Virus record (IMG/VR): IMGVR_UViG_3300026292_000003
Span: 62,001-126,000 of that record
DNA: 64,000 nt
Strand: one strand, 5' to 3'
Shown here: positions 1 to 21,900 of the stretch, piece after piece
How positions within the stretch are numbered: position 1 is the first letter of the stretch
Layout: each line of letters starts with the position of its first letter
Made by a program: the position numbers and the translations under genes
Notes under the pieces: model-generated
What the model saw: the letters and a program-made list of their open reading frames with translations, nothing else
Told to the model about the DNA's origin: nothing
The model's database searches: none

Positions 1-1
1 C

Positions 2-1654
2 ACAGCTCAAACAGATACACAGAATTTAACTTTCCAAGTTAATGCAGTTCCTACTGCTCCAGATGGACTTGGAAATAAAACAATTTCACTAGTAGATCCT
101 GCACAAGGTACAGATCCAAAATTAGCATATAATTTCACAGACAATAGTGCAACATCACCATTAACAGCAGGTGACGATTTGGATACAACTACTGCAAGGA
201 GATATACAGGTGGAACACTTGACACGACAATAGCAGAGAATGCATACGATGGACTATCGGGAACTGTAACTGCAATAGTTAATGGTACCCCGAGTGGATC
301 AAAAACCTTTTCTACTTCCCTCAACGAAACTGGTACATTTAATGATTTAGTGATCACTCAACAAGATGATGCTCACAATACAATAAGTGCTTCGACATAC
401 CCAACTGGTTTCTACCAAACATTTGATTCAAAAATTTCTAAACCATTTGCAGAGTATGCTATTGGTGTTAATGATCAGAGAATAGAACATAGTACAACAG
501 GTGAAACAAATTACGTAACTGTTATGTGTGATGACCTAACAGACGTACCTACACTTGATGATACTAGTTCTATTCTTTCTGAGAGTGTTTCAGGAAATTA
601 CAGATACATATCAGGTATACCATACTATAATACAGGAAATCCAAAATTAACTTTATCAGGATTAAGTGTAACAAATTGGATAGGACAAGCATATAGAGAT
701 ACTAGTAATGTTTTAGAATTTAGTAATGGTACTAATTCAGAAGGTACTACAGGCGGAACAATTCAAACACAATTTGCAAGTTATGCAGATTTAGAAGATG
801 CTACATATCTAGTAAATGGTGTACCAACAGCTAATACATTAAGTTATTCATTTGCTGATCAAACTATTGATATTACACAATCAAACATAGCGGCAGTTGA
901 AACTATCAAAGCTAGAATTAAGAATGTTAATGGATCAAGTAGCTATAAAGAATTTAATACAAAAGTACAAGTACACAGATCTAATCCAACAGGTGTAATA
1001 GAAGATAGTATACCTGTAGCAGGTAGTTTAGGTAATGGAGCAATAACAGACAATGCAATACGTATAGCAGATTTTGTTTCAGATGGTACAGACAACCCAA
1101 CAATAGTAGGTGCAACAGATTATACAGCTACACCATTTACAGGTGCAGTAAGTGTAAGTGGAACACAAGAAGCAACTGTACGTTGGGGAACATTAGAACA
1201 CAATACAACAGATTATTCAACTGGGTATCTTCCAGTTGGTCCTGATAGAAGTGCAGATACAGGAACACAATATTTTACATTCGCATTCCGTAGACAGGTT
1301 GTAGCTAATTTTAGTATTACAATTAATACAACTGGTATAAGTGGATTGTGGGTAGCGGCACCAGGTACTGCTATTGATTCAGCAAGTGGATTAAATGGTT
1401 GGATAGATGGAACAGCTCAATACGCAGGTGTTGGTGTACCAGGTAGTAATACAGCTTCAGGTGGTAACGGAGGAGACGGTTGTGCGTTAACAGGTGCAGA
1501 CGTTATTCCAACTAATACAAGTATTAACTCAACTTATACAATGACATTAGGTAGTGAGAATATGAGTAATGCAACTAACAATGTTGTACTAGTTAGAGTA
1601 GCATTAGAAGCAGGAAAACAAATTACTAACTTACAAATAGGGGAGTCTAGCTAA
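2..1654 (+). CDS. Virion structural (tail/baseplate-associated) protein, 5'-truncated
   Basis: Frame is open from position 2 (TAQTDTQNLTFQVNAVP...), so the TTG at 179 is internal. Thr/Gly/Ser-rich beta-type composition; stop overlaps the next ATG. Confidence 0.7.
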   Translation, partial: TAQTDTQNLTFQVNAVPTAPDGLGNKTISLVDPAQGTDPKLAYNFTDNSATSPLTAGDDLDTTTARRYTGGTLDTTIAENAYDGLSGTVTAIVNGTPSGSKTFSTSLNETGTFNDLVITQQDDAHNTISASTYPTGFYQTFDSKISKPFAEYAIGVNDQRIEHSTTGETNYVTVMCDDLTDVPTLDDTSSILSESVSGNYRYISGIPYYNTGNPKLTLSGLSVTNWIGQAYRDTSNVLEFSNGTNSEGTTGGTIQTQFASYADLEDATYLVNGVPTANTLSYSFADQTIDITQSNIAAVETIKARIKNVNGSSSYKEFNTKVQVHRSNPTGVIEDSIPVAGSLGNGAITDNAIRIADFVSDGTDNPTIVGATDYTATPFTGAVSVSGTQEATVRWGTLEHNTTDYSTGYLPVGPDRSADTGTQYFTFAFRRQVVANFSITINTTGISGLWVAAPGTAIDSASGLNGWIDGTAQYAGVGVPGSNTASGGNGGDGCALTGADVIPTNTSINSTYTMTLGSENMSNATNNVVLVRVALEAGKQITNLQIGESS

Positions 1655-2844
1655 TGGCAATTAGTGATAATCAAAAAATTGACTACCTATTTAAAAAGAT
1701 TGGTTATGGTGCGACTAAAACAGATACCAATGCTAATAAGTTGGCGGCTAACGAATCAATTCCAAGTCCGTTATTATTACGTGGTGATAAAGTTTGGGCA
1801 GAAGCTGGCAACGTTCCAGCAGTTAAACCAAATGCAGATACAACTGTAGTCAAGTTATATAATGCTGTTGAATGTACAGAAGATATAACGTCAACAGGAA
1901 ATAGAACTTGGAAAACTAATATTACAGATTGGATTACACCAGAGTTTGGTAGTACATATCTAGTAAGTGTTTATATACATGACGCAAATGATTCAGCAGG
2001 TGCTGAAAGTTTAGCTAATAAAGTATTCGTAACAGGAAGTGGTAACAACGACGAATGGTTCTTTGATTACCAATCAGGTGTATTAAATTTTATTGGTGAT
2101 AGTTTACCAGATGGTAAATCATTTACAGGTAAGAGTGTATATATAAGTGGAGCAGTATATCAAGGTAGATTTGGTGTAGGTGATTCAACAGTAACACAAG
2201 GCCTACAAGATCAGATTGATAACATTATACAAAATACTGATCCAGCGGCACTTGACTCTTTAAGTGAAATTGTTACAGCTTTCCAAAGTGCTGATAGTGC
2301 CTTTGCTACAAGCACAGATCTAAATAGTTTAGAAGCATTATTAAGAAATGATTTAGCATTTCCTTCTACTAACATAGAGCCAGCACAATCATTTACAGGT
2401 GATGGTACAACAACAGAGTATCAACTAACAGCTACTGACTTACCTTCAGTAGAAGCTATTGATGTATACGTAGATGATGTGTTACAAAGACCAGATGTAT
2501 TCTCAATAGATTCAAATAATAAACTAGTATTTAATATTACACCAGATGCAGGTGCAGATATATATGTAAAATATAGATTTCATTTTGCAAGTATTACAGC
2601 ATTTCCTGATAACTGCATAGAAAATAGACATCTTAATTTGATATATAATAGTAGTCAGTATACTGGTGATGCTACAACTACACAATATACTATTGCAAGT
2701 GGTCATACTGTACATAGTGTATTAGTAATAGTAGATGGAGCAATACTTCCACCGACAGATTATACTGTAATAGGGTCTACCCTAACTATAACAAATGCTC
2801 CGGCAAGTGGAGCAGTAGTAGACTTTAGATTTCTTCCAATTTAA
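1654..2844 (+). CDS. Virion structural protein with DPAALDSL fibre motif and two 'GDG.TT.Y..V.VD' beta modules
   Basis: TAATG coupling; modules shared with the neighbouring fibre gene. Confidence 0.7.
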   Translation: MAISDNQKIDYLFKKIGYGATKTDTNANKLAANESIPSPLLLRGDKVWAEAGNVPAVKPNADTTVVKLYNAVECTEDITSTGNRTWKTNITDWITPEFGSTYLVSVYIHDANDSAGAESLANKVFVTGSGNNDEWFFDYQSGVLNFIGDSLPDGKSFTGKSVYISGAVYQGRFGVGDSTVTQGLQDQIDNIIQNTDPAALDSLSEIVTAFQSADSAFATSTDLNSLEALLRNDLAFPSTNIEPAQSFTGDGTTTEYQLTATDLPSVEAIDVYVDDVLQRPDVFSIDSNNKLVFNITPDAGADIYVKYRFHFASITAFPDNCIENRHLNLIYNSSQYTGDATTTQYTIASGHTVHSVLVIVDGAILPPTDYTVIGSTLTITNAPASGAVVDFRFLPI

Positions 2845-2878
2845 ATCAAATCATAATACTTAATAAACAGCAATATTG

Positions 2879-2887
2879 AATAAATAC
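2879..2887 (+). promoter_or_regulatory. T4-late-like promoter (AATAAATAC)
   Basis: ATAAATA core recurs upstream of about 20 structural/late genes; resembles T4 gp55-dependent TATAAATA. Confidence 0.75.
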
Positions 2888-2981
2888 ATTGCATGGGTTT
2901 CGTACCTATGTAGAATACGTAAGTATTCTTTGCTTATAAAGATTATAAGCAAATCAAATATATTTGATTGGAGAAATCTCT

Positions 2982-5900
2982 ATGGCTTTTAGACAAATTA
3001 AGAGTCCGGCGTTAGCTAACCAGGCGGTTATCGACACCAAATTAGATGTTAGTTCAGTTTCAGGCCAAACAGCAACTACATCTTTGAACTCACTAGATAC
3101 TCTTCTTATTCACGACAATGCAAACGCGGCGTTAAAGAGCATAACTGCGGCCAACTTAATCGCATCTTATGACACTGACGATTTAGGTGAAGGTTCAACG
3201 AACCTATTCTTTACCAATGCAAGAGCTCAATCAGCAGTAGCGGCAGATATCGCTTCAGCTGTAGCGGCGGAAGCATCAATTGCACGTGCGGCAGAAACTG
3301 CAAATGCAAACGATATCGCGGCTGAAATAACAAGAGCGACAACAGCAGAAGGTGTGAATGCGACAGACATAGCTAGTGAAATTACACGTGCAACAGCGGC
3401 AGAAACAGCCCTGGATACGGCGTATAAGGCGGCAGATGCTGGATTACAATCACAAATAAGTAATATTATATCAAACGTGGATCCTGCGGCACTTGACAGT
3501 TTATCTGAAATTGTTGCAGAATTTCAATCACAAGATAGTGCATTAACTGCGGCTATTACAGCTAACTCAACATTAATTAATAACGAGACAGCTAGAGCTC
3601 AAGCGGCAGAACAAGCAAATGCAACTGCAATTAGCAACGAGGCAACAAGAGCACAAGCGGCTGAAGCAACTAACGCATCTGATATTTCAACAGAAGCGGC
3701 AAGAGCAACAGCGGCTGAAAACGCACTTGATGCTAGAGTAACTGCTAATGAAGGTGACATTTCTACACTACAAACTGATTTAGCGGCAGAAATATCAGCA
3801 ACTAACGGTGAAATCACTACACTAACAAATGATTTAGCAAGTGAAATTTCACGTGCAACAGGTGCTGAACAAGCGAATGCTCAAGACATTGCAAACGAAG
3901 CAACGGCAAGAGCAAATGAAGACACAAGTATTAGAGCAGACTTTGCGACAGCAGATGCTACAACTTTAGCATCAGCTCAAACATATGCAGATACAGCAGA
4001 AGCAGATGCAATCGCTACAGCGGCGGCAGATGCAACTACTAAAGCAAACGCGGCACAAGCGGCGGCGGAAGCACACGCAGATACAGTATCGGCGGCAGAG
4101 ACAGCGGCTATCAATACAGCGGTAGCAGTAGTTGACGCTAAAGTTACTACAAACACTACAGACATTGCGGCTCTAGAAACTGTAGTTGGTGATGTAGCAA
4201 ATACACCACTTGACACTACAGCAACTTCTTTAGGTGGAGCGATTAACGAACTACATACTGAAGTTACTACAGCAACAACAAACATTGCAACTAACACAGC
4301 AGACATTGCAACTAACGCAACAGATATCGCAACTAATGCGGCAGATATTGCTAACATTATTAGTAATACTGACCCAGCGGCTCTGGATTCATTAACAGAA
4401 ATTGTTACTGCATTCCAAGCTGGTGATAGTGCGGCGACAGCGGCAATCAATGCTAACGCAACGTCAATTAGTAACGAAGCAACAGCTAGAGCAAACGCAG
4501 ATACAACACTACAAACTAACATCACTGCTGAAGAAACAAGAGCTACAGCGGCTGAAGGTGTTTTAACTGCAAACCTAGCAAGTGAAGTAACTAACAGACA
4601 AGCAGGTGACGCAACTACTTTAGCATCAGCACAAGCATATGCTGATCAAGCAGAAGCAGATGCAATTTCAACTGCGGCGGCTGACGCAACAACTAAAGCA
4701 GACTCTGCAGAAGCAGACGCTAAAGCATATGCTGACACTCTACAAGACACTTTAATTGGTGACAATACTGTAGACGGTACAGCAGGTAATACTGTTACAG
4801 ACAGAATTGCTACAGCTAAAGCGGGTGCAGAATCAACAGCAGAAGCTTATACTGACCAAGAAGTTCTAACTGAAAAGACTAGAGCTATGGCGGCAGAAGC
4901 GGCTAACGCATTAAATATTACAGCGAATACAGGTGATATTGCTACAAACGCAACAGACATTGCAACTAACGCATCAGCTATTTCAACAGAAGTAACTGAC
5001 AGAGTTAATGCAGTAGCTGGTGTAACAACTTCATTAAACAATGAAATAGCAAGAGCACAAGCGGCTGAATTAGTTAATACACAAGCTATTACTGCTGAAG
5101 AAACAAGAGCACTTGCGGCTGAAGCGGCAAACGCAACTGCAATCGCAAACGAAGTATCAAGATCAACAACAGCAGACACGACGCATACAGCTAACATTGC
5201 AACTAACACTAACGATATTGCTACTAACTTAACAAGTATCAATAACGAGGTGGCTAGAGCAACAGCGGCTGAACAAGCACTTACAACTAACCTGGCTACT
5301 GAAACAGCTAGAATTGATTCAATTCTAACTAACACGGACCCAGCGGCGTTAGATTCACTAACTGAAATTGTTTCAGCATTCCAAAGTGCTGATAACACAA
5401 TCAATGGTGCAATCACATCACTATCAACAACAGCCTCAACTGACAGAGCGGCAATACGTTCTGAATTTGCGGCGGCAGACACAGCATTAGACAATCGTCT
5501 AACTACTGAAGAAGCTAACGTTGACGCATTACAAGCCCTAGCAGGTAGTGCGGCACTAGCAACTACAGCTCAAACATTAACTGAAGCAATCAACGAACTG
5601 AACGCAGGTACAGCGGCTGATTTAACTTCTGTTAATAACGCAATTGATGCAGTAGAAAGTGGTGCAGGACTAGCAAGTGATGGCTCTTACTCAGCTCACA
5701 CTGGTACACACGCAATTGACTCAGCTGTGTCATTACATGACGCAGACAGTAAATTGGATGCGGCTATTTTAGCAGAGAAAACAAGAGCAGAAGCGGCTGA
5801 AGCAACATTAACTACTAATGTGGCAACAAACGCAACTAATATCGGAAATAACACAACAGACATTGCAACTAACACAACAGCTATTGCTACAAATGCAACT

Positions 5901-7778
5901 GCTATCTCTACTAATGCATCAGATCTTGCATCAGAAATTACTAGAGCTACAGCGGCAGAAACAGCAAATGCTAACGCAATCACAGCAGAAGCAAATACAG
6001 CTAGAGCGGCAGAAACAGTTAATGCCAACGCAATCGCGGCAGAAACTACTAGAGCACAAGCGGCTGAATCAGCTAATGCATCCGATATAGCAGACAATCT
6101 AACTGAAATTACTGCAACACAATCTGGTGCAGGATTAGCAAATGACGGTACTTACAATACACCTAGTGGATCAAATTACATTGATACTGCTACATCATTG
6201 GCAAGTGCTGACACGAAGTTAGATGCGGCAATCAAAGCTGAAGAAACTAGAGCGACAGCGGCAGAGGGTGTTTTAACTAACAACCTTACAGCTGAAACTA
6301 ATAGAGCTACAGCGGCGGAAGCACAGAACGCAACTGATATCGCGGCGGAAGCTACGAGAGCGGCGGCGGCAGAAACTGTGAATGCAAATGCCATAACAAC
6401 AGTAGCTACTGATTTAGCAACTGAAGTGACTCGTGCAACTGCGGCGGAAAACGCAAATGCGGCAGACATCACATCACTAACAAGCACAGTTAACGATATT
6501 ATCAGCAACACGGATCCAGCGGCGCTAGATTCATTAACTGAAATCGTTACTGCGTTCCAAAATGCGGACAGTACACTAACAGGTGCTGTAGCGGCAAACG
6601 GAACGGCTATTGCGGCAGAAGAAACAAGAGCACTAGCGGCAGAGGCGGCATTAAGCACAGCCTTAACAAATGAAGTAAACGACAACGACACTGACCACGC
6701 GGCGGCGACAACTGACAGGGCGGCTATCCGTACTGAGTTTGCGGCGGCTGATTCAGCTCAAGACGCTGTCATCGCAACTAAACTAGCACTTGCTGGTGGA
6801 ACAATGGCGGGTGACATTGCAATGGGCGGACAAATGGTATCAGGACTGGGTACAGCAGTTAATGCTGGTGACGCAGTTTCTAAAGCAGTTATGGATGCGG
6901 CTATTTCAGCACAAGATATCACTGTATACACTACAGATGATTTAGCTGAAGGTTCAAATCTATACTACACTGATACTAGATCACGTGCGGCAATTAGTGT
7001 CAATGACGTTGCAGGAAACGGCTTGGTAAGTTACGATAATAGCACAGGTGTTATTAGTGTAAATACTAACGAATCAGTTCTTGACTTAACAGATGTATCT
7101 GATACAGCATACACTGGCAAGGACGGATACGTATTAGCAGTTAATGCGAACGAAGACGGTATGGAACTGTCAAACCCACTAAACGTTTTCTCAACACAAG
7201 AGAGACAAACAATTAATGGTGATGGTGTTGCTACGCAATACTCATTAACTTTTACAACAACACAAGATCAAGCATATGTGTTTGTTGGAGGTGTTATTCA
7301 GGATCCATCAACTCACTACACTATCGATAGTGCGGCGAAAACTATCACGTTTAACTCAGCAGTACCAGTTGGTACACAAATTGTTGTGTTATCACCAGGT
7401 GCAGGACTTAACCCAGTACTACTTGCTAACTCAGTATCATTCGACAAATTAGCGGCTGATATTAAAGCATACGTACAAAAAGGTGAAGTATCAGCTACAG
7501 GTTCAACTACAGTTGATTCATTCAACGGTGCGTTGTATCGTTCAGCGAAGTACATCATGCAGGTTGATGACGGTGCAGGTAACTATGAGACACGTGAAGC
7601 TTTAGTAGTACATGATGGTAGTACTGCATACATTACAGAGTACGCAATGGTTTATACTGGTGCAGACTTAATTGGTGATGCAAGTGTTACTATGAACGGA
7701 AACCAAGTTGAATTAACTTATACTCCGACAAGTGGTACAGCTACAGTTAAAGTGATCGCTACTTACATTGATGTGTAA
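2982..7778 (+). CDS. Giant Ala/Thr-rich coiled-coil tail fibre protein (~1598 aa)
   Basis: GGAGA RBS precedes ATG 2982 (MAFRQIK). Repeated E.TRATAAE..NA..I coiled-coil units, four DPAALDSL motifs, TDDL.EG..NL motifs, C-terminal YRSAKY...VHDG domain. Confidence 0.85.
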   Translation: MAFRQIKSPALANQAVIDTKLDVSSVSGQTATTSLNSLDTLLIHDNANAALKSITAANLIASYDTDDLGEGSTNLFFTNARAQSAVAADIASAVAAEASIARAAETANANDIAAEITRATTAEGVNATDIASEITRATAAETALDTAYKAADAGLQSQISNIISNVDPAALDSLSEIVAEFQSQDSALTAAITANSTLINNETARAQAAEQANATAISNEATRAQAAEATNASDISTEAARATAAENALDARVTANEGDISTLQTDLAAEISATNGEITTLTNDLASEISRATGAEQANAQDIANEATARANEDTSIRADFATADATTLASAQTYADTAEADAIATAAADATTKANAAQAAAEAHADTVSAAETAAINTAVAVVDAKVTTNTTDIAALETVVGDVANTPLDTTATSLGGAINELHTEVTTATTNIATNTADIATNATDIATNAADIANIISNTDPAALDSLTEIVTAFQAGDSAATAAINANATSISNEATARANADTTLQTNITAEETRATAAEGVLTANLASEVTNRQAGDATTLASAQAYADQAEADAISTAAADATTKADSAEADAKAYADTLQDTLIGDNTVDGTAGNTVTDRIATAKAGAESTAEAYTDQEVLTEKTRAMAAEAANALNITANTGDIATNATDIATNASAISTEVTDRVNAVAGVTTSLNNEIARAQAAELVNTQAITAEETRALAAEAANATAIANEVSRSTTADTTHTANIATNTNDIATNLTSINNEVARATAAEQALTTNLATETARIDSILTNTDPAALDSLTEIVSAFQSADNTINGAITSLSTTASTDRAAIRSEFAAADTALDNRLTTEEANVDALQALAGSAALATTAQTLTEAINELNAGTAADLTSVNNAIDAVESGAGLASDGSYSAHTGTHAIDSAVSLHDADSKLDAAILAEKTRAEAAEATLTTNVATNATNIGNNTTDIATNTTAIATNATAISTNASDLASEITRATAAETANANAITAEANTARAAETVNANAIAAETTRAQAAESANASDIADNLTEITATQSGAGLANDGTYNTPSGSNYIDTATSLASADTKLDAAIKAEETRATAAEGVLTNNLTAETNRATAAEAQNATDIAAEATRAAAAETVNANAITTVATDLATEVTRATAAENANAADITSLTSTVNDIISNTDPAALDSLTEIVTAFQNADSTLTGAVAANGTAIAAEETRALAAEAALSTALTNEVNDNDTDHAAATTDRAAIRTEFAAADSAQDAVIATKLALAGGTMAGDIAMGGQMVSGLGTAVNAGDAVSKAVMDAAISAQDITVYTTDDLAEGSNLYYTDTRSRAAISVNDVAGNGLVSYDNSTGVISVNTNESVLDLTDVSDTAYTGKDGYVLAVNANEDGMELSNPLNVFSTQERQTINGDGVATQYSLTFTTTQDQAYVFVGGVIQDPSTHYTIDSAAKTITFNSAVPVGTQIVVLSPGAGLNPVLLANSVSFDKLAADIKAYVQKGEVSATGSTTVDSFNGALYRSAKYIMQVDDGAGNYETREALVVHDGSTAYITEYAMVYTGADLIGDASVTMNGNQVELTYTPTSGTATVKVIATYIDV

Positions 7779-7810
7779 GGAGTATATCGCTTCTTAAGTA
7801 ACCAAACTTA

Positions 7811-7844
7811 AAGGGGCGTAACAAATTAAGGTTACGCCTCTTTT
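7811..7844 (+). terminator. Rho-independent terminator
   Basis: GGGGCGTAAC-loop-GTTACGCCTC followed by TTTT. Confidence 0.8.
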
Positions 7845-7887
7845 AAAATAGCTTTATTATCAAAGCGGATAATATTGCTAGAAAAAG

Positions 7888-7896
7888 AATAAATAC
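7888..7896 (+). promoter_or_regulatory. Late promoter (AATAAATAC)
   Basis: Motif upstream of fibre gene with AAGGAG RBS. Confidence 0.7.
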
Positions 7897-7947
7897 TTTG
7901 CTACTCAATGTGGCAATAACTTTTTTGATCAAAAAGGAGTCATAAAA

Positions 7948-9810
7948 ATGGCACAAAGAAAATTTATAATTGACGGTGGTTTTAAAACTGATGACGCCTC
8001 AGAATTACTAGCCAATTTAACAATGGGTGGTTCAATCCTACCTAATGTTGATTCGGATGGTACAACTGGTTACGACTTAGGTTCGACTACTGCTAAATGG
8101 AAAGATTTATACCTTTCTCAAGGATCACTTTACATTAATAACCAAAAAGTAATCCATGATGATTCAGGTACAATCGTTTTCAAAGCAGATATGGACCAAG
8201 GCTTAACTGTTAAAACTGAGGGCACAGGAGTAATTACCCTGCAATCAACACAAACAGTAAATGTCGCTGGTACACTACAAATTACAGACGGCAAAAACAT
8301 CACTTCAAGTGGTGGAACTTCAGTTGGTTTTGGTGACAAAATTGATATGGGTTCAAATAAGATCATCAACGTTCCTAATCCAACGGATAACGGTGATGCG
8401 GCTAACAAAACTTACGTGGACTTACAGGTTGCAAACGTAATCAACGGTGCACCAGGTGCGTTAGACACACTTAACGAATTAGCAAATGCTTTAGGCGATG
8501 ATGCTAACTTCTCAACTACAGTAACAAACTCAATTGCGGCTAACGCATCTGATATTGTTGCTCTACAAACTACTTCAAGTAATAATGCGACAGCTATAGC
8601 AACAGCACAAACAGATATTGTTGCTAATACAACAGCTATTACAGCTGAAGCAGTAACAGCAAGAGCAAATGAACAAGCAAATACTGCGGCAATCAATGCT
8701 CTAGATTCTGCATACCAAACAGCTGATGCAACAATTAATTCAGCAGTAGCTTTAAAAGCAAACAAAACTTATGTTGATACACAAGACACAGCATTAGATA
8801 CATCTTTAAAAGCATACGCAGACTCAGCTGAAACAGATGCAGTAGCTACAGCTCAGTCATACACAGACGGCAGAGAAGCGGCAATCACAACTGCTTACAC
8901 AGCGGCGATTGCATCTTCAGCGTCATCAAGTGGTTCAACTGCTAACAGTTACACAGACACAGAAATTGCAACAGCAACTACAGCTATTACTTCAGCATAC
9001 CAAACTTATGCTGATACAGCTGAAACAGATGCAGTAGCAACAGCGGCGGCAGATGCAACTACTAAAGCAGATGCGGCACGTGCAGGTGCAGTAGCAGATG
9101 TTAAAGCCTCTGATTTAGATATGGGCGGAAACAAAGTTCTTTTCGGTAACGTTTATTCAACAGACGGCGATCTACCAAGTGCGGGTACATACCACGGTAT
9201 GTTTGCTCACGTACACACTGGCGGAAAAGCTGTTATGGCACATGACGGTAACTGGGTAGAACTAGCTAAAACATCAGACCTTACAACTGCGGTTAACAAC
9301 CTTGTTGACTCAGCACCAGGTGCTCTAGATACATTAAATGAACTAGCGGCGGCTATGGGTGATGATGCTAACTTTAGTACAACAATGACTAACAATTTAG
9401 CAGGCAAAGCGTCAACTGGTACTTCAATTACAGCAGGTAATGGATTATCAGGCGGTGGTGACTTTAGTACAGACAGAACAATATCTATGTCTGGTAACTT
9501 TACTGGTGACTTTACAGCAACTGGTGATATTACTGCTTACTCAGATGAAAGTTTAAAAACTAACATCCAAGTAATTGATGGTGCATTAGGTAAAGTAGAG
9601 AACATTAGTGGTTATACTTGGAATAGAATTGCAGATGATTCAAGAGCAACAGGTGTTGTTGCCCAAGAATTAGAAGCAGTACTTCCAGAAGCAGTACACA
9701 CTGATGCTGATGGTTTAAAATCAGTAGCATACGGTAACATTACAGGTCTACTAATTGAAGCGGTTAAAGAATTATCAGCTCAAGTAGCAGAACTTAAAGC
9801 TAACAAGTAA
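7948..9810 (+). CDS. Tail fibre protein with C-terminal peptidase S74 intramolecular chaperone
   Basis: C-terminus AYSDESLKTNI...GVVAQELEAVLPEAV...VAYGNITGLLIEAVKEL is the typical S74/ICD signature; APGALDTLNELA motifs. Confidence 0.9.
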   Translation: MAQRKFIIDGGFKTDDASELLANLTMGGSILPNVDSDGTTGYDLGSTTAKWKDLYLSQGSLYINNQKVIHDDSGTIVFKADMDQGLTVKTEGTGVITLQSTQTVNVAGTLQITDGKNITSSGGTSVGFGDKIDMGSNKIINVPNPTDNGDAANKTYVDLQVANVINGAPGALDTLNELANALGDDANFSTTVTNSIAANASDIVALQTTSSNNATAIATAQTDIVANTTAITAEAVTARANEQANTAAINALDSAYQTADATINSAVALKANKTYVDTQDTALDTSLKAYADSAETDAVATAQSYTDGREAAITTAYTAAIASSASSSGSTANSYTDTEIATATTAITSAYQTYADTAETDAVATAAADATTKADAARAGAVADVKASDLDMGGNKVLFGNVYSTDGDLPSAGTYHGMFAHVHTGGKAVMAHDGNWVELAKTSDLTTAVNNLVDSAPGALDTLNELAAAMGDDANFSTTMTNNLAGKASTGTSITAGNGLSGGGDFSTDRTISMSGNFTGDFTATGDITAYSDESLKTNIQVIDGALGKVENISGYTWNRIADDSRATGVVAQELEAVLPEAVHTDADGLKSVAYGNITGLLIEAVKELSAQVAELKANK

Positions 9811-9828
9811 TTATATTACTAATATATT

Positions 9829-9859
9829 AAAGCGGGTGTAAGAAATTACACTCGCTTTT
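9829..9859 (+). terminator. Rho-independent terminator
   Basis: AAAGCGGGTGTAA-loop-TTACACTCGCTTTT. Confidence 0.8.
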
Positions 9860-9922
9860 CTTATGGCTATGCTATACTTCAAAAAGCGATAAATAGTATT
9901 ATAATTAGCTGTAGGAGTAAAA

Positions 9923-10612
9923 ATGGCATTTAGAAAGATACAAGTAAGTAACTTACAAAGCACAGAATCTGCTGTCAAAGACCCTTTACTAATACTTAAT
10001 CAAGATTCATCAGAAGATGTTGATTCAGGTTTTTTAGCAAAAAGAGGTGTCAGTACATATTCTGGGCTAGTACGTGATTCAGCTACAGCAAAGTTCTATT
10101 TAATTGAATCAATTAATTTAGTAACAAATTCTCTTAATGATATTAGTGCAGTAGATGGTACGTTATCAAAGGGTATACTAGAACTAAATTCGTTAAATGC
10201 TACAACAATATATGTAACAGGTGCAAGTGGTGCAATACATACAACAAATTTAGTAACAGAAAATATTGGCTATTGGCCAGCAGATCCAACTGATACAACA
10301 AAACATATTTTAACAGTTGGTGACGCAACTACACCTGCAGAGTATATAGGTAATGTTACAGGTAACGTTACAGGTAATGTAGTAGGTAATATTGAAGGTA
10401 ATATTATTAATTCATTGGGACAACCAGTAGTTGATAACTCGGGTGCTCTTAATCCTACTAGATTTAAAGTACCAAAAGGATTAACTTCAGAACGCCCAAC
10501 ACCGGCCGCAGAAGGCGATATGTGGTTTAATACAGAAACAAAGATGTTTGAAGGGTATGATGGAACAGCATGGCAACAACTTGTGCCTTCACAGTTTCAA
10601 AGTACACCATAA
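9923..10612 (+). CDS. Tail-fibre-associated structural protein
   Basis: Late promoter GATAAATAG at 9888; GNVTGNVTGNVVGNIEG repeats; C-terminal PKG.TSERP...G.MWFNTETKMFEGYDG..W domain common in phage fibres. Confidence 0.7.
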   Translation: MAFRKIQVSNLQSTESAVKDPLLILNQDSSEDVDSGFLAKRGVSTYSGLVRDSATAKFYLIESINLVTNSLNDISAVDGTLSKGILELNSLNATTIYVTGASGAIHTTNLVTENIGYWPADPTDTTKHILTVGDATTPAEYIGNVTGNVTGNVVGNIEGNIINSLGQPVVDNSGALNPTRFKVPKGLTSERPTPAAEGDMWFNTETKMFEGYDGTAWQQLVPSQFQSTP

Positions 10613-10633
10613 ATAGTAGTAGAGGATATATAA

Positions 10634-12397
10634 ATGGCATTTAAAATTGGAAACAAAATAGTATTACATGACGCAGATCCTTCTGCAACACTATTAACAG
10701 AAAGTAACTTAGATAGGTTACAAATTAATGGTGTAGATGTATTAACGCATGACGGTACTACAGTTACATTAAAAAATGTAGATATTAATGACGCATTAGA
10801 GAGTACAATAAACACAGACAATCTTACAGAAGGAACTACAAATTTATTTTTTACAGATGCTAGAGCAGTATCAGCATTATCAGGTTTAGCAACAACAGTC
10901 AGTAATAATACTACAGCAATTAATAATAATGCTACAGCAATTTCAAATAATGCAACAGCAATCGCAAACAATGCCACAGCAATTACAAATAATGCTACAG
11001 CTATTACAAATAATGAAACAGCAATTAATAATAATGTTACAGCAATCGCAAACACACTAGTAGATGCAAAAGCATATACAGATACTAGAGAAACTGCAAT
11101 TACTACAGCATATACAGCGGCTATAGCGTCATCTACGTCAAGTGGTAGTACAGCGGCAAACGCATATACAGATGCAGAAATTGCTACAGCTACAGCAAGT
11201 ATAACATCAGCATATCAAACAGCTGATGCAACAACTTTATCTTCAGCTCAAACTTATGCGGATACAGCAGAAGCAGATGCAGTAACTACAGCTAACGCAT
11301 ATACAGATGCCAGAGAAGTCGCAATCACTACAGCATATCAAACTTATACAGATACAGCAGAAGCAGATGCAAAAGCATATGCAGATACACAAATTGCAAA
11401 TTTAGTTGATTCTGCACCAACTACATTAGACACACTAAATGAATTAGCGTCAGCACTAGGTGACGATGCTAACTTCTCAACTACAGTAACAAATTCAATA
11501 GCAACTAAACTTCCACTAGCTGGTGGAACAATGGCAGGAGATCTTACATTAAGTGGAGCTCCAACAAATAATCTTCATGCGGCTACTAAAGCATATGTTG
11601 ATTCAGCAGTAACTGGTGGAACAGGTGCATTAGATACAGACGATATTGCAGAAGGAACAACTAATTTATACTATACAGATGCTAGAGCAGATGCTAGAGC
11701 AACCTTAAGAATTAATGCGGCGACAACAGACAATATAGATGAAGGTAGTACTAATTTATATTATACAAATACTAGAGCAAGAACAGAAATAGAAGGTGCA
11801 GATTTAGATTTAGGTACAAACAAAATATTATATTCTAATGTTTATGCTACAACTGGTGATTTACCAAGTGCAACAAGTTATCATGGAATGTTTGCTCATG
11901 TACACGGCACAGGCAAAGGATATTTTGCTCATGCAAATAACTGGGTAGAACTAGCAAATCAAAGTGATATTCCAACAAACAATAATCAATTGACTAATGG
12001 TGCAGGTTATGTTACAACTGATACAAATACAACATATACAGCAGGTAACGGATTATCATTAGTTGGCACAGAATTTTTAATGAGTGGTAGTTACACAGGT
12101 GACTTTACAGCAACAGGTGATGTTACAGCATACTCAGATAAAAGATTAAAAAGAAATATTGAAACTATTAATAATGCAGTAGATACTGTAAGCAAATTAC
12201 GTGGTGTAAATTTTGAAAAAGATGGTAGACATAGCACTGGTGTAATAGCACAAGAAGTAGAAGAAGTTTTACCTCAAGTAGTACATACAGCTCCAGATGG
12301 TATGAAATCAGTAGCATATGGTAATATTGTAGGACTATTAATTGAGGCTATTAAAGAACAACAAAAAGAGATAGAGGAGTTAAAAAAGAAAATATAA
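10634..12397 (+). CDS. Second tail fibre protein with C-terminal peptidase S74 chaperone
   Basis: AYSDKRLKRNI...GVIAQEVEEVLPQVV...VAYGNIVGLLIEAIKE; late promoter CATAAATAG at 10608. Confidence 0.9.
   Translation: MAFKIGNKIVLHDADPSATLLTESNLDRLQINGVDVLTHDGTTVTLKNVDINDALESTINTDNLTEGTTNLFFTDARAVSALSGLATTVSNNTTAINNNATAISNNATAIANNATAITNNATAITNNETAINNNVTAIANTLVDAKAYTDTRETAITTAYTAAIASSTSSGSTAANAYTDAEIATATASITSAYQTADATTLSSAQTYADTAEADAVTTANAYTDAREVAITTAYQTYTDTAEADAKAYADTQIANLVDSAPTTLDTLNELASALGDDANFSTTVTNSIATKLPLAGGTMAGDLTLSGAPTNNLHAATKAYVDSAVTGGTGALDTDDIAEGTTNLYYTDARADARATLRINAATTDNIDEGSTNLYYTNTRARTEIEGADLDLGTNKILYSNVYATTGDLPSATSYHGMFAHVHGTGKGYFAHANNWVELANQSDIPTNNNQLTNGAGYVTTDTNTTYTAGNGLSLVGTEFLMSGSYTGDFTATGDVTAYSDKRLKRNIETINNAVDTVSKLRGVNFEKDGRHSTGVIAQEVEEVLPQVVHTAPDGMKSVAYGNIVGLLIEAIKEQQKEIEELKKKI
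10904..11050 (+). repeat. Seven degenerate 21-nt tandem repeats encoding NNxTAIx heptads
   Basis: AATAATGCTACAGCAATT-NNN-type units read directly from the sequence. Confidence 0.9.
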
Positions 12398-12412
12398 GCA
12401 TAAATATACTTT

Positions 12413-12817
12413 ATGAAAGTAAGCGATAATACACAGATATCAATGCCAATCCGTAATATGATTGCGATCATAGGAGCAATTTGTATGGGAGTTTGGGCTT
12501 ACTTTGGAATAACTGAAAAGTTAAATCAACATAGCAATACACTTACATTAATGCAAAAAGACCTAGAGTCAAATACTGAATTTCGTATTAAGTATCCACG
12601 TGGAGAATTAGGACAAAGTCAGAATGATTTAGAGCAGTTTATGTTAATAGAAGAATTATATAAAAGTGTTGAAAAAATGGAAAAAGTATTAGAATCAAAT
12701 ATGACTAACAAAGTTAACATTGACTTTTTAAAAGAACAAGTAGATAAAATGTTAAATGATATTGAGAAGTTAAAAGACAAGCAACGTGAGTTTGCTAACG
12801 GTAACGGAGGTCACTAA
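12413..12817 (+). CDS. Hypothetical membrane-anchored coiled-coil protein
   Basis: N-terminal TM segment (MIAIIGAICMGVWAYFGI) then coiled coil; late promoter CATAAATA at 12399. Confidence 0.6.
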   Translation: MKVSDNTQISMPIRNMIAIIGAICMGVWAYFGITEKLNQHSNTLTLMQKDLESNTEFRIKYPRGELGQSQNDLEQFMLIEELYKSVEKMEKVLESNMTNKVNIDFLKEQVDKMLNDIEKLKDKQREFANGNGGH

Positions 12818-13029
12818 TGGTAGAAACAGTAGTAGCCCTATTAATGCTTATAAACAACGAAATTAAAGAGCACAGAATACAAGAATCTATGGGTGTATGT
12901 TTAAGAGGTAAACGTACAGCAGAAAGACAATATTCAGAAGGTGTAAAATACCAATGCATCAAATCTAAAGCAAAACTTGAGTTAAACATAGATGGAACTA
13001 AAACAATTAAAGCTCTTATATTAGAATAA
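12817..13029 (+). CDS. Small hypothetical protein (two Cys), coupled to the previous gene
   Basis: TAATG overlap, GGAGG RBS. Confidence 0.6.
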   Translation: MVETVVALLMLINNEIKEHRIQESMGVCLRGKRTAERQYSEGVKYQCIKSKAKLELNIDGTKTIKALILE

Positions 13030-13131
13030 AGAGATTATAAACTACTATATAACACGAGCTATATAGATAAATAATAATACAAGCAATATGCTTGTAATTA
13101 ACGTTAATTACAATTATGACAGGAGAGTAAT

Positions 13132-13320
13132 ATGTCGACATTACCAGCAACCGGTTCAAATATTTCTATGTCAACTGTGCGTAACTATTTTGGATTAAGT
13201 GGAACAGTTTCCATGAGTACATTAGGTAGCACAATCTCACCGTCAGTGACGTCTAATATCAAACTTTCAGCTACATTTGGTGGTTGGCAGTATCCGTCAC
13301 CGTCTGGTTCACATCCATAA
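13132..13320 (+). CDS. 62-aa Ser/Thr-rich protein, probable fibre-tip cap (gp38-attachment-domain-like)
   Basis: Own late promoter (GATAAATA 13066) and AGGAGA RBS; M.TLP..G..ISMS.V start resembles small proteins that follow S74 fibres. Confidence 0.6.
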   Translation: MSTLPATGSNISMSTVRNYFGLSGTVSMSTLGSTISPSVTSNIKLSATFGGWQYPSPSGSHP

Positions 13321-13361
13321 GAAATATTGTAAAACATATTTAATAGGTACGTTGTTTATAC

Positions 13362-13396
13362 TTGACAACGTGCCTATTGTAATGTAAAATAAATAC
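13362..13396 (+). promoter_or_regulatory. Overlapping sigma70-like (TTGACA-N17-TAAAAT) and late (AATAAATAC) promoters
   Basis: Both motifs read directly; the -35 box lies in hairpin 13342-13378. Confidence 0.7.
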
Positions 13397-13455
13397 ACTT
13401 GTAAAAATTATTATTGTGACCAATAGTAAAAGTAAACTCAACACAGGAGAAAACA

Positions 13456-13875
13456 ATGATTAGAACTCGTTATGAGATTGAAACGTTTGTACTTGGAGCA
13501 CACCCGTCTCCAGCCAGAAAGGCACAAGTACTTACAGAAGAGCTAATGAAAGCTCGTGAAACAAAACACCCAGACCTTCCAATATTAGAAGCAATTTATA
13601 AAGATTTTTCTGCAGAACATAATGTAGAAGAACTTTCAAAAGATATTGAATCTACTGAAGAAGAATATTGGGTACACAGACTAGCAAAACTAGCGGCAAT
13701 TGATATTTTAACAATTGGTAAAGTACAACCAGAGCATATGGCTTATATGGTTGCGTTACCAGATGAAGCTTTCAAAGCATCAGTTAAAGAAGCCACAAGT
13801 ATTGCTAAACAACTAAATTATGAGGTTCAACAAATTGAAGCTGAACTTCAAGCAGATTTAGCATCTGCAAAATAA
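13456..13875 (+). CDS. Hypothetical helical protein, possible fibre assembly factor
   Basis: AGGAGA RBS; no motif recognised; role inferred from position only. Confidence 0.55.
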   Translation: MIRTRYEIETFVLGAHPSPARKAQVLTEELMKARETKHPDLPILEAIYKDFSAEHNVEELSKDIESTEEEYWVHRLAKLAAIDILTIGKVQPEHMAYMVALPDEAFKASVKEATSIAKQLNYEVQQIEAELQADLASAK

Positions 13876-13880
13876 ACTGA

Positions 13881-14531
13881 ATGGTAACCACTCCATCATT
13901 TTATCATAAAAAGAATAATTCCGCTTCTGTAGCTATTTGCGTTCCTGTGCGAGATAATGTTACTGCGGTCTTTGCTTACAGTCTTGCTATGCTTCAACGA
14001 AAGTGTGGTGAGGCTGGGTTAGCTACTTCTCTACATTTTATTATGGGTAGTGAAGTTACTATACAAAGACAACAGTTAGTATCTGAAGCACTAGAAACAA
14101 ATTGTACTCACATTATGTGGATTGATTCTGATATGCAATTTCCAGTAGATACCCTAAATATATTATTAGCGGCAGATAAAGATATTGTTGCTGGAAATTA
14201 TTCAACAAGAGTTCCACCACATAGACCAGTCGCTTTTAGAAGTAAAAATAATCTAGATGATAGAGTTTTTACTGGTACAGGCTTAGAAAAAGTTTGGGCT
14301 GTAGGAAGTGGAATGATGTTAGTAAAAAGAGAAGTTTATGAAAAGTTAAATTCACCTTTTTATAAAATTGAATATTCAGAAGACTATTCAAGTTTAGTAG
14401 GAGAAGACGTATATTTTTGTACAAAAGCTAACGAAGCAGGATATGAAGTATATGTAAGTCACGAACTGAGTGACAAAATAGCACACATAGGAACACGTGC
14501 ATTTACAGTTAAAGGCGATTGCAATGATTAA
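13881..14531 (+). CDS. GT-A fold (family 2-like) glycosyltransferase
   Basis: VAICVP start, WIDSDM DxD motif, G.GMMLVKREV, GEDVYFC, HIG. Confidence 0.85.
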   Translation: MVTTPSFYHKKNNSASVAICVPVRDNVTAVFAYSLAMLQRKCGEAGLATSLHFIMGSEVTIQRQQLVSEALETNCTHIMWIDSDMQFPVDTLNILLAADKDIVAGNYSTRVPPHRPVAFRSKNNLDDRVFTGTGLEKVWAVGSGMMLVKREVYEKLNSPFYKIEYSEDYSSLVGEDVYFCTKANEAGYEVYVSHELSDKIAHIGTRAFTVKGDCND

Positions 14532-15615: not shown

Positions 15616-15909
15616 ATGATTCAATGGTTAAAGAAATCAATTCATCATTTAAAAGTAGAAACAGGATGGGGCTACTTTTATCATTTATGGCATAGCCTTT
15701 GCAATAGCTGGGCTTTAATTGTTATAGCATTTAAAAGTGTAGTACACGGATTATTTCCTTGGATATGGAAAGCAGATGCACCTAAAGGGGTTATTCGTAT
15801 GTATCATCAAATTATGAGAATTGAACATATAGAAAAGATGGACAAGTTAAGAAAGTTACCAAAAGATGAACGATATAAATCCAATAAACCTATTGACCCT
15901 ATTGAATAG
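15616..15909 (+). CDS. Small membrane protein, DUF6356-like
   Basis: HL......YFYHL...VHGLFPWIW pattern. Confidence 0.55.
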   Translation: MIQWLKKSIHHLKVETGWGYFYHLWHSLCNSWALIVIAFKSVVHGLFPWIWKADAPKGVIRMYHQIMRIEHIEKMDKLRKLPKDERYKSNKPIDPIE

Positions 15910-19402: not shown

Positions 19403-19479
19403 ATGTGTCCTATCCAATGTGTGCAATCGTCGTGTGGGTCATCGCATTCACTACAAGTAGAGTCTCCAGTATCCTGCAT
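19399..19479 (-). CDS. Putative 26-aa Cys/His micropeptide (MQDTGDSTCSECDDPHDDCTHWIGHI)
   Basis: AAGGA upstream; overlaps the gp15 end; ATGA-coupled to NUDIX. Confidence 0.45.
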   Translation of the reverse strand: MQDTGDSTCSECDDPHDDCTHWIGHI

Positions 19480-21879: not shown

Positions 21880-21900
21880 ATGGTTTTCCTTGTTATGTTG

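What the first reader, a model, noticed from the sequence alone, without database searches (positions are those of the whole stretch)
2982..12397. Strong avoidance of GCWGC, visible as forced GCG/GCC codons in Ala-Ala pairs
Seen: isolated Ala is mostly GCA/GCT in this AT-rich genome, yet in every Ala-Ala pair I checked the first codon is GCG or GCC (for example GCGGCGGCGGAA near 4059 and GCGGCGGCGGCA near 6360). The same holds at about 33334, 37421, 44702 and 59589, and on the minus strand at about 19388 and 20649. I saw no GCAGC or GCTGC by eye, even in these very Ala-rich fibres. Known: GCWGC is a restriction-modification target (TseI/ApeKI type). Inference: long-term selection by a host defence, or by a phage nuclease that cuts host DNA at GCWGC. 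This could help identify the host.
Basis: partly seen in the sequence, partly recalled or inferred. Interest (0 to 1): 0.75.

Follow-up and report, generated by a model that had tools for sequence, protein, structure and literature searches.

The report
Marine jumbo phage purged of GCWGC
An uncultivated marine jumbo phage has removed every copy of the 5-base restriction target GCWGC (and of RCATGY) from at least 221 kb of DNA by silent codon changes, a clean but ordinary case of a phage dodging its host's restriction enzymes.

Summary
GCAGC/GCTGC occurs 0 times in the 64-kb window, against 121±5 expected from synonymous-codon shuffles. It also occurs 0 times in the whole 221.6-kb virus record, against 247±7.5 expected. 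All 295 Ala-Ala pairs start with GCG or GCC, while other Ala codons are about 91% GCA/GCT.

A second site, RCATGY (the NspI site), is also totally absent (0 vs 92). GCTAGC and GCAAGC are nearly absent.

The record is an IMG/VR marine contig, about 60% complete. It is distant kin of PA5oct/Rak2-like jumbo myoviruses.

Among its many marine relatives the avoidance is patchy. It is complete in at least 3 separate lineages, normal in others, and in partly avoiding relatives the sites cluster in the tail-fibre module. Close relatives show coupled substitutions that keep the site from forming, so selection is ongoing.

No DNA methyltransferase and no credible sequence-specific nuclease was found in the phage.

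The best explanation is avoidance of a host Type II restriction-modification system. This could be TseI/ApeKI-type GCWGC or BbvI/BceSIV-type GCAGC; the two target the same set of sites.

The host was not identified. The clues are an alphaproteobacterial-type tmRNA and a relative binned with an OM43 genome.

This is a new member of a known kind, of moderate interest.

The parts
1..64000 (.). Whole window free of GCWGC (0 vs 120.6±5.1) and of RCATGY (0 vs 25.5±3.5). It is part of a 221.6-kb record that is also free of both.
1654..2844 (+). Tail-fibre-like protein of 396 aa. It shares a short repeated motif with the large fibre protein.
2964..7778 (+). Fibre protein of 1604 aa, 23.6% Ala, with 71 Ala-Ala pairs that all start with GCG. 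Its ortholog in relative G001 carries 52 GCWGC sites.
7948..9810 (+). Tail fibre with a C-terminal Peptidase_S74 intramolecular chaperone domain. Its 10 Ala-Ala pairs all start with GCG.
9923..10612 (+). Small fibre-module protein of 229 aa. Its single Ala-Ala pair starts with GCC.
10634..12397 (+). Tail fibre with a C-terminal Peptidase_S74 chaperone domain. Its 4 Ala-Ala pairs all start with GCG.
4050..4066 (+).
6360..6370 (+).
44702..44706 (+).
19389..19393 (-). A second minus-strand example, GCCGC, lies at 20649.
36853..36857 (+). Coupled substitution: GCACC here versus GCGGC in relative L004. Position 4 becomes G only together with position 3 changing A to G, so GCAGC never forms.
41609..41613 (+). 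Coupled substitution in the large terminase gene: GCGGC here versus TCAGC or TCTGC in five relatives. W appears at position 3 only where the first G is lost.
40214..41770 (+). Large terminase (Terminase_6N/6C), used as the marker to find relatives and build the tree.

Best explanation
The phage escapes a host Type II restriction-modification system by having no target sites.

The host population carries an endonuclease that cuts unmethylated GCWGC. It could be a TseI/ApeKI-type enzyme cutting within G^CWGC, or a BbvI/BceSIV-type enzyme reading GCAGC. GCAGC in either orientation is exactly the same set of sites, so sequence alone cannot tell the two apart.

Incoming phage DNA is unmethylated, and the phage has no detectable methyltransferase. 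Every site is therefore a potential lethal cut, and variants that lose sites win. In this AT-rich genome most would-be sites are Ala-Ala codon pairs (GCW-GCN). They were silenced by switching the first codon to the otherwise rare GCG or GCC. The few sites expected in the other two reading frames and between genes are gone as well.

The same logic explains the total loss of RCATGY (NspI-type) and the near-loss of GCTAGC and GCAAGC. The host population apparently carries several such systems.

Shown here: the absence of sites, its statistics, the silent nature of the removals, ongoing constraint in close relatives, the patchy distribution among kin, and the lack of a phage methyltransferase in the 221 kb held.

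Inferred: that the selecting agent is a host restriction enzyme, its type, and the identity of the host.
For: 1. Total absence against codon-aware nulls: 0 vs 247±7.5 for the record, 0 vs 120.6±5.1 for the window, zero in all three frames and in intergenic DNA.
2. GCWGC is the most depleted of all 4-6-mers and of 535 REBASE sites. It matches TseI, ApeKI, NhoI, BbvI and BceSIV.
3. GCSGC is over-represented, 319 vs 184. The target is therefore GCWGC and not GCNGC.
4. At orthologous Ala-Ala positions where relatives have GCWGC and the amino acids are kept, this phage has GCGGC 45 times and GCCGC 7 times.
5. In relatives at 8-13% nucleotide divergence, about 32 site creations are expected under neutrality and 0 are seen. 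Fourteen distinct changes that alone would make a site each come with a second change in the same 5-mer.
6. A second palindrome, RCATGY, is at 0 vs 92. GCTAGC is 1 vs 13 and GCAAGC 3 vs 36. This is the usual multi-site signature of restriction pressure.
7. The trait is strain-like. The window sits in a 99%-supported clade of 8 site-free sequences, sister clades are normal, and the site-free state needs at least 3-4 changes on the terminase tree.
8. No C5 or N4/N6 methyltransferase was found in this record or in five relatives, and no methyltransferase appeared in a PADLOC scan of 159 proteins.
9. No integrase was found, and the replication and packaging genes are T4-like. This is the virulent dsDNA phage class in which complete site elimination is documented (PMC6286503).
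Against: No host is known, so no cognate endonuclease or methylome could be shown.

The one bacterial genome linked to a relative is a Methylophilaceae metagenome-assembled genome (MAG). It has normal GCWGC content and no C5 methyltransferase.

Cultured phages of SAR11 and OM43 strains do not avoid GCWGC.

The record is only about 60% complete. A phage methyltransferase or nuclease could lie in the missing part.

The GCWGC methylation reported so far in plankton comes from an orphan m4C methyltransferase of Chloroflexi, not from a full restriction system (PMC6329791, PMC8919816).
Confidence: 0.8

Rival explanations
1. The phage itself encodes a GCWGC-specific nuclease, with no methylase, that it uses to shred host DNA. 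Its own genome must therefore be site-free.
For: The record contains a 183-aa HNH endonuclease at G000:32125-32676, which gave a weak PADLOC REase_II hit. About 40% of the genome is missing.
Against: The HNH gene has no homolog in any of five relatives, including the site-free G004 and G005 fragments. Only two genes are shared solely with site-free relatives: a cupin and an unknown 331-aa protein. Neither looks like a nuclease. At least two and probably four unrelated sites are avoided, which would need several such nucleases. One lineage avoids only GCWGC and another avoids both sites, which fits variable host repertoires better.
Confidence: 0.05
2. The site is avoided so that the phage is not methylated. 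In this reading the phage cycles between hosts that methylate GCWGC and hosts with methylation-dependent (Type IV or BisI-like) nucleases that cut methylated GCNGC.
For: GCWGC methyltransferases without a partner nuclease exist in planktonic bacteria (PMC6329791, PMC8919816). BisI-family enzymes cut methylated GCNGC (PMC4926085, abstract as listed). Sequence alone cannot separate this from classic restriction.
Against: It is less parsimonious. It needs two kinds of host and would have to hold for RCATGY, GCTAGC and GCAAGC as well. Published surveys attribute complete site elimination overwhelmingly to orthodox Type II systems (PMC6286503).
Confidence: 0.05
3. The cause is not defence at all. 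It is a translational codon-pair preference, a mutational bias, or a functional sequence signal that happens to exclude GCWGC.
For: Most expected sites (232 of 247) lie in one codon context, Ala-Ala. Synonymous shuffles also show other depletions unrelated to restriction, such as poly-A and Shine-Dalgarno-like words.
Against: Relatives with the same codon usage use GCA/GCT freely before Ala. In G002 that is 65% of Ala-Ala pairs. The other two frames and intergenic DNA are also empty: 15 and 7.8 sites expected, 0 seen. Even the tmRNA tag ends GCGGCC where the family consensus has GCUGCC. An absolute zero is not what a graded bias produces.
Confidence: 0.03
4. It is an assembly or base-calling artefact, for example systematic miscalls at a methylated motif.
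For: Methylated motifs are known to cause systematic nanopore errors (PMC10687267, title and abstract as listed).
Against: The likely source run dates from 2017. The sequence recurs in independent metagenomes and in an Illumina metatranscriptome. Independent IMG/VR assemblies of relatives are also site-free. Both GCG and GCC are used as replacements, and frames 2 and 3 show no excess of GCSGC.
Confidence: 0.01

Closest known systems
Restriction-site avoidance in virulent dsDNA phages (surveyed by Rusinov et al. 2018, PMC6286503)
   Same: There is complete elimination of a short Type II recognition site, achieved mostly by silent changes, in a non-temperate dsDNA phage with no methyltransferase. 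That survey reports complete or near-complete elimination in about a tenth of viral genomes.
   Different: Here the host and its enzyme are unknown because the genome is an uncultivated marine contig. The record is very large (221 kb with zero sites). The trait can also be followed switching on and off among hundreds of environmental relatives.
TseI / ApeKI (Type IIP, G^CWGC) and BbvI / BceSIV (Type IIS or two-subunit, GCAGC) restriction-modification systems
   Same: The avoided word is exactly their recognition sequence (PMC3643589, PMC8557920). GCSGC is not avoided, as expected for W-specific enzymes.
   Different: No such enzyme was located in any candidate host. The known examples come from Thermus, Aeropyrum and Bacillus rather than marine plankton. 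The two enzyme classes cannot be told apart from an avoidance pattern.
NspI-type systems (RCATG^Y)
   Same: The second totally absent word in this phage and in relative G004 is exactly this degenerate palindrome: 0 vs 92 and 0 vs 36.
   Different: It is not avoided by other GCWGC-free relatives such as G005, L066 and L069, so it reflects a separate system.
Self-methylating marine phages, e.g. OM43 phage Melnitz with an HhaI-like methylase (PMC9004378)
   Same: It comes from the same ecological setting and carries an alphaproteobacterial-type two-piece tmRNA. It also shows strong avoidance of other sites: GATC 4 vs 186, with GGACC, CGCG and AACGTT at zero.
   Different: Melnitz carries a methyltransferase and has normal GCWGC, 55 vs 51. 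This phage has no methyltransferase and relies on site loss.
Orphan m4C GCWGC methyltransferase M.AbaBS3I of pelagic Chloroflexi, and GCWGC methylation in a marine Chloroflexi MAG (PMC6329791, PMC8919816)
   Same: It shows that GCWGC-specific DNA recognition exists in planktonic prokaryotes.
   Different: It is an orphan methyltransferase with no nuclease, so it would not select for avoidance. There is no evidence linking this phage to Chloroflexi.

Membership tests
Anti-restriction by recognition-site elimination | The word is significantly under-represented against composition-aware and codon-aware nulls | tested here: met
   0 vs 247±7.5 from synonymous shuffles, 0 vs 228 from the Markov model, 0 vs 75±8 in the window from dinucleotide shuffles.
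Anti-restriction by recognition-site elimination | The avoided word is a recognition sequence of known Type II enzymes | tested here: met
   The REBASE list in Biopython gives TseI, ApeKI and NhoI (GCWGC) and BbvI, BseXI and BceSIV (GCAGC). It gives NspI for RCATGY.
Anti-restriction by recognition-site elimination | Sites are removed without changing proteins, and the constraint is still acting | tested here: met
   52 of 52 conserved Ala-Ala orthologous positions carry GCGGC or GCCGC. There are 14 coupled substitutions, and 0 of about 32 expected site creations appear in close relatives.
Anti-restriction by recognition-site elimination | The host encodes a nuclease of that specificity | not testable with these tools
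   The host is unknown. The only linked bacterial genome (G006, a Methylophilaceae MAG) has no C5 methyltransferase and normal GCWGC.
Anti-restriction by recognition-site elimination | The phage lacks its own protective methylation or modification | tested here: inconclusive
   No PF00145 or PF01555 hit, no methyltransferase in the PADLOC scan of 159 proteins, and no TGT/DpdA. However, the record is about 60% complete and virion DNA chemistry is unknown.
Anti-restriction by recognition-site elimination | Virulent (non-temperate) dsDNA phage | tested here: met
   No tyrosine integrase. The genes include a T4-type terminase, tail sheath, gp15-like protein, UvsX-like recombinase and DnaB-like helicase. 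The incomplete record limits this test.
Target of a GCNGC-specific enzyme (Fnu4HI/BsoFI type) | All four GCNGC words are avoided | tested here: not met
   GCGGC plus GCCGC total 319 against 184 expected, so they are over-represented.
Phage-encoded restriction-like nuclease with self-avoidance | A sequence-specific nuclease gene is present and shared by all avoiding relatives | tested here: not met
   The only candidate is a lone HNH at G000:32125-32676, with no homolog in G001-G005. All records are fragments, so absence is not proven.
PA5oct / Rak2-like jumbo myoviruses (identity of the carrier) | Shared core genes with high similarity | tested here: inconclusive
   Large terminase identity is 54% to PA5oct-like phages and 45% to Rak2/121Q-like phages. 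DNA similarity covers only about 24% of an 8-kb core stretch at 67%. It is related, but forms a separate marine lineage with more than 599 IMG/VR contigs.

The most novel reading that the evidence does not exclude
The site-free state is imposed by the phage's own biology. A GCWGC-cutting nuclease, encoded in the roughly 40% of the genome not recovered, would destroy host DNA early in infection and force the phage to keep its own DNA free of the site. The evidence does not exclude this, but it gives it no positive support.
Probability: 0.05. Interest if true: 0.75.

Novelty: new member of a known kind. Interest (0 to 1): 0.38.

Why it matters
The mechanism is textbook. The case is still useful for three reasons.

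First, it shows restriction enzymes acting as a strong, ongoing selective force on an abundant, uncultivated marine jumbo-phage lineage.

Second, the set of avoided sites works as a fingerprint of the unseen host's defence repertoire. This phage and relative G004 share only 71% terminase identity and 62% median protein identity, yet both avoid GCWGC, RCATGY, GCTAGC and GCAAGC. That suggests they meet the same host population. Other lineages avoid only GCWGC.

Third, the forced GCG/GCC-before-Ala codon pairs persist as a scar in relatives that have regained sites (54% in G001 and 35% in G002, against about 8-14% at other Ala codons). Past exposure can therefore be read from sequence.

Sites return first in the tail-fibre module. 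This links exchange of host-range genes with movement between restriction regimes.

If marine methylomes or single-cell genomes with GCWGC and RCATGY systems become available, this fingerprint could assign a host.

Tried and rejected
Artefact. Rejected, because independent runs and assemblies agree.

Codon-pair or translational bias. Rejected, because relatives with the same codon usage use GCW before Ala, and the other frames and intergenic DNA are also empty.

GCNGC target. Rejected, because GCSGC is in excess.

Search for a phage methyltransferase or nuclease. There was no PF00145 or PF01555 hit. The PADLOC scan of 159 proteins of at least 150 aa gave only generic hits. The mREase_IV and REase_MTase_I hits are an SF2 helicase at window 49526-50977, and the REase_II hit is a lone HNH. 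Proteins under 150 aa or over 1300 aa were not scanned.

Gene content shared only by site-free records. This gave a cupin and an unknown protein, which is not informative.

Host identification:
- The phage database holds no near relative.
- The terminase search of 185,579 species genomes gave only two metagenome bins, one Methylophilaceae and one archaeal.
- The Methylophilaceae chromosome shows no GCWGC depletion and has no C5 methylase.
- The tmRNA resembles only that of OM43 phage Melnitz, and weakly.
- Melnitz and SAR11 phage HTVC008M avoid other sites but not GCWGC.
- An Atlas look-up of a radical-SAM protein gave only viral clusters.
- Literature searches found GCWGC methylation only in planktonic Chloroflexi, from an orphan methyltransferase.

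Full report
1. THE OBSERVATION

GCAGC and GCTGC are each absent from the 64-kb window. The window is bases 62001-126000 of a single 221,643-bp contig with 33.6% G+C. That whole contig also has zero copies.

Three independent nulls give high expectations:
- Dinucleotide shuffles give 75±8 for the window.
- A maximal-order Markov model gives 228 for the record.
- Synonymous codon shuffles within each of 264 crudely called genes give 247±7.5 for the record, with a minimum of 225 in 200 shuffles. The same method gives 120.6±5.1 for the window and 63.6±4.0 for the finding's own region.

The codon-shuffle null is conservative, because it keeps the forced GCG/GCC codons.

Intergenic DNA has 0 against 7.8 expected.

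Of 295 Ala-Ala pairs, the first codon is GCG in 250 and GCC in 45, and never GCA or GCT. Among the other 4356 Ala codons, about 91% are GCA or GCT.

All eight example coordinates check out. The region 2964-12397 does encode tail fibres. Two of the proteins carry the Peptidase_S74 chaperone domain, and the 1604-aa protein is 23.6% Ala.

2. WHAT ELSE IS AVOIDED

I compared all 4-6-mers and 535 REBASE recognition sequences with synonymous shuffles. GCWGC is the strongest depletion.

A second site class is also completely absent: RCATGY, the NspI site. It is 0 vs 92 in the record and 0 vs 25.5 in the window.

Other sites:
- GCTAGC (1 vs 13), GCAAGC (3 vs 36) and CAATTG (27 vs 92) are strongly low.
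- AAGCTT and CTGCAG are low in this phage and in all five large relatives.
- GCSGC is over-represented, 319 vs 184. The avoided target is therefore W-specific, not GCNGC.
- Several CpG-containing words such as ACGCT, GCGC and TCGA are also low. These may partly reflect codon-junction CpG avoidance, and I do not lean on them.

3. WHAT THE GENOME IS

The record is an IMG/VR virus contig. It is linear and CheckV estimates it at about 60% complete. It comes from marine metagenomes. Near-identical sequence occurs in many seawater DNA runs and metatranscriptomes from different studies.

Its nearest cultured relatives are PA5oct-like Pseudomonas jumbo phages, at 54% large-terminase identity. Next come Atu_ph07-like and Rak2/121Q-like phages. 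There is no near match at the DNA level.

More than 599 IMG/VR contigs encode related terminases, so this is a large marine lineage.

The window holds a T4-type terminase, tail sheath, gp15-like sheath stabiliser, RecA/UvsX-like recombinase, DnaB-like helicase and an SF2 helicase. No tyrosine integrase was found.

4. RULING OUT AN ARTEFACT

Contigs from three other runs were laid on the fibre gene. One was an Illumina metatranscriptome contig with 4 differences in 4692 bases. None of the 43 variants the tool listed creates a GCWGC; a further 37 variants were not shown and were not checked. Divergent loose ends in two of those runs do contain GCAGC or GCTGC, so site-bearing strains coexist in the sea.

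Six independently assembled relatives with 83-100% terminase identity are also site-free.

5. HOW THE SITES WERE REMOVED, AND WHETHER SELECTION STILL ACTS

I looked at orthologous positions where relatives G001, G002 and G003 have GCWGC and the amino acids are identical. At those positions this phage has GCGGC 45 times, GCCGC 7 times and GTAGT once. All of these are silent.

Against close relatives at 8-13% nucleotide divergence, the record offers 4857 single substitutions that would create a site. About 32 site creations would be expected in the 46 kb aligned if changes were neutral, and none is seen. Fourteen distinct substitutions that alone would create a site did occur. Each is coupled to a second change in the same 5-mer:
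- GCACC versus GCGGC at window 36853.
- GCTGG versus GCCGC at 40469.
- GCGGC versus TCAGC at 41609.

The loci overlap, so the expected number is approximate. The qualitative result is clear: the constraint is current and not merely inherited.

Even the phage's tmRNA tag ends GCGGCC where the family consensus reads GCUGCC.

6. DISTRIBUTION AMONG RELATIVES

In the 80 fetched loci the state is patchy. Whole-record counts, observed vs codon-shuffle expectation, are:

| Record | Size | Terminase identity to G000 | GCWGC | RCATGY |
|---|---|---|---|---|
| G000 | 221.6 kb | this phage | 0/246 | 0/92 |
| G004 | 86 kb | 71% | 0/131 | 0/36 |
| G005 | 35 kb | 65% | 0/48 | 28/26 |
| G003 | 123 kb | 88% | 38/202 | not avoided |
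| G001 | 205 kb | 89% | 167/325 | not avoided |
| G002 | 198 kb | 67% | 269/341 | not avoided |

G004 also has GCTAGC at 0 and GCAAGC at 3.

On a terminase tree the window lies in a 99%-supported clade of eight sequences, all site-free. Sister clades are normal. The site-free state needs at least 3-4 changes on the tree. The root is not known, so gains and losses cannot be told apart.

The forced codon pairs persist as a scar. The share of Ala-Ala pairs starting with GCG or GCC is 100% in G000, G004 and G005, 84% in G003, 54% in G001 and 35% in G002. At other Ala codons it is 8-14%. This suggests that avoidance was once wider in the lineage and is decaying in some branches.

In G001 and G003 the returned sites concentrate in the tail-fibre module orthologous to the finding's region. 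In G001, 73 of 167 sites lie in three adjacent fibre genes, and the 1595-aa ortholog of window 2964-7778 alone has 52. The most likely cause is import of fibre segments from phages that are not under this pressure. This is an inference.

7. IS THE AGENT IN THE PHAGE?

No C5 methyltransferase (PF00145) and no N4/N6 methyltransferase (PF01555) is present in this record or in five relatives. The only hit was below the family cut-off and interrupted by stop codons, in G001.

A PADLOC scan of the 159 proteins of 150-1300 aa found no methyltransferase. Its restriction-like hits were:
- An SF2 helicase at window 49526-50977, which accounts for the mREase_IV and REase_MTase_I models. The mREase_IV model also matched all 14 control genomes.
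- A 183-aa HNH endonuclease at G000:32125-32676.

The HNH gene has no homolog in any of the five relatives, including the site-free ones. Only two genes are shared exclusively with site-free records, a cupin and an unknown 331-aa protein.

No TGT/DpdA gene was found, so a deazaguanine DNA modification is not indicated.

All these records are fragments, so absence is not proof.

8. BEST EXPLANATION

This is classic restriction-site avoidance. A host Type II system that cuts unmethylated GCWGC selects against every site in a virulent phage that does not methylate its own DNA. In an AT-rich, Ala-rich genome this shows up as obligatory GCG/GCC before Ala.

TseI/ApeKI-type (G^CWGC) and BbvI/BceSIV-type (GCAGC) enzymes see the same set of sites, so they cannot be distinguished here.

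The additional loss of RCATGY, GCTAGC and GCAAGC points to several systems in the host population.

Published surveys show complete or near-complete elimination of Type II sites in about a tenth of prokaryotic virus genomes, chiefly non-temperate dsDNA phages (PMC6286503).

I put this explanation at about 0.8. The rivals are a phage nuclease (0.05), avoidance of methylation because of methylation-dependent nucleases (0.05), a non-defence bias (0.03) and an artefact (0.01).

9. THE HOST

The host was not identified. The clues are:
- The record encodes 12 tRNAs and a two-piece tmRNA at G000:162260-162602, outside the window. The tmRNA scores best as the alphaproteobacterial type: Rfam RF01849, 97 bits, E 1.5e-26.
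- In the phage collection, only OM43 phage Melnitz shows nucleotide similarity to it, 72% over 108 bases. Melnitz and SAR11 myophages are known to carry alphaproteobacterial-type two-piece tmRNAs (PMC9004378).
- A relative at 72% terminase identity forms the second contig of a two-contig Methylophilaceae bin from the Fram Strait. That chromosome has normal GCWGC (634 vs 579 in 420 kb) and no C5 methylase. Its phage contig is only partly depleted, 20 vs 79.5.
- Melnitz and HTVC008M avoid other sites strongly (GATC, TCGA, ACGT, GGACC, CGCG, AACGTT) but not GCWGC. This phage does not avoid GATC.

The host is therefore probably an AT-rich streamlined marine heterotroph of the SAR11/OM43 kind, with a restriction repertoire different from the cultured strains. 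This is a weak inference.

GCWGC methylation has been reported in planktonic Chloroflexi, but from an orphan methyltransferase (PMC6329791, PMC8919816).

10. VERDICT

The phenomenon is a new member of a well-known kind.

Its value lies in the clean natural experiment among hundreds of marine relatives and in the fingerprint it offers for future host assignment.

Noticed in passing
window 1-64000 (whole record G000:C1:1-221643): RCATGY, the NspI recognition site, is also totally absent: 0 vs 92 in the record and 0 vs 25.5 in the window. This accounts for much of the general CATG deficit (282 vs 540). Relative G004 shares the absence, but G005, L066, L069 and L075 do not.
   Followed up: yes
whole record G000 and relatives G001-G005: GCTAGC (1 vs 13), GCAAGC (3 vs 36) and CAATTG (27 vs 92) are strongly low in this phage. 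AAGCTT and CTGCAG are low in all six large records, which suggests older, lineage-wide restriction pressures.
   Followed up: partly
L081:1260-1602 (= G000:C1:162260-162602, outside the window): The phage encodes a two-piece (permuted) tmRNA that scores best as the alphaproteobacterial type. ARAGORN reads the tag as AEDNFAIAA. The tag's final Ala-Ala is coded GCGGCC where the family consensus has GCUGCC. The only nucleotide similarity in the phage collection is to SsrA of OM43 phage Melnitz.
   Followed up: partly
G000:C1:56951-57025, 137219-139986 and 164451-168012 (outside the window): There are twelve tRNA genes, mostly in two clusters. None lies in the window.
   Followed up: no
G000:C1:6797-10682, 170262-172020, 185199-185519, 192912-194643, 208676-209149 (outside the window): The record holds ten radical-SAM open reading frames, at least two with SPASM domains. 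Their nearest ESM Atlas clusters are almost entirely viral. This is an unusually large set for one phage, and its function is unknown.
   Followed up: partly
G000:C1:32125-32676, minus strand (outside the window): A lone 183-aa HNH endonuclease (Pfam HNH_5) with no homolog in five related records. It is probably a mobile homing-type gene.
   Followed up: partly
window 2964-7778 and 1654-2844: The large fibre gene holds internal repeats: contigs laid on it jump back between about 3948 and 4056 and other places. A motif of about 30 aa recurs along the orthologous G001 fibre protein and matches window 1654-2844.
   Followed up: no
G001:C1:192804-200462 and G003:C1:58708-62648: In relatives that only partly avoid GCWGC, the sites pile up in the tail-fibre genes orthologous to the finding's region. 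This suggests fibre segments were imported from phages not under this pressure.
   Followed up: yes
L136 / G006:C2:1-89521: The public bin 'uncultured Methylophilaceae bacterium FRAM18_bin317' consists of one 1.02-Mb chromosome plus an 89.5-kb contig. That contig is a jumbo-phage fragment of this lineage (72% terminase identity). It is either an infecting phage or a binning error.
   Followed up: partly
L164 (HTVC008M 60001-110000) and L137 (Melnitz 1-50000): Cultured SAR11 and OM43 myophages show their own strong site avoidance. HTVC008M has GATC 30 vs 145, TCGA 1 vs 44.5 and ACGT 38 vs 127. Melnitz has GATC 4 vs 186, with GGACC, CGCG and AACGTT at 0, and CTGCAG 3 vs 21.
   Followed up: partly
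window 1-64000: There is a strong purine excess on the + strand (A 24011 vs T 17861; G 12506 vs C 9622), in line with most genes lying on that strand. Runs of A and Shine-Dalgarno-like words (CCTC/GAGG, AAGGAG) are depleted relative to synonymous shuffles.
   Followed up: no
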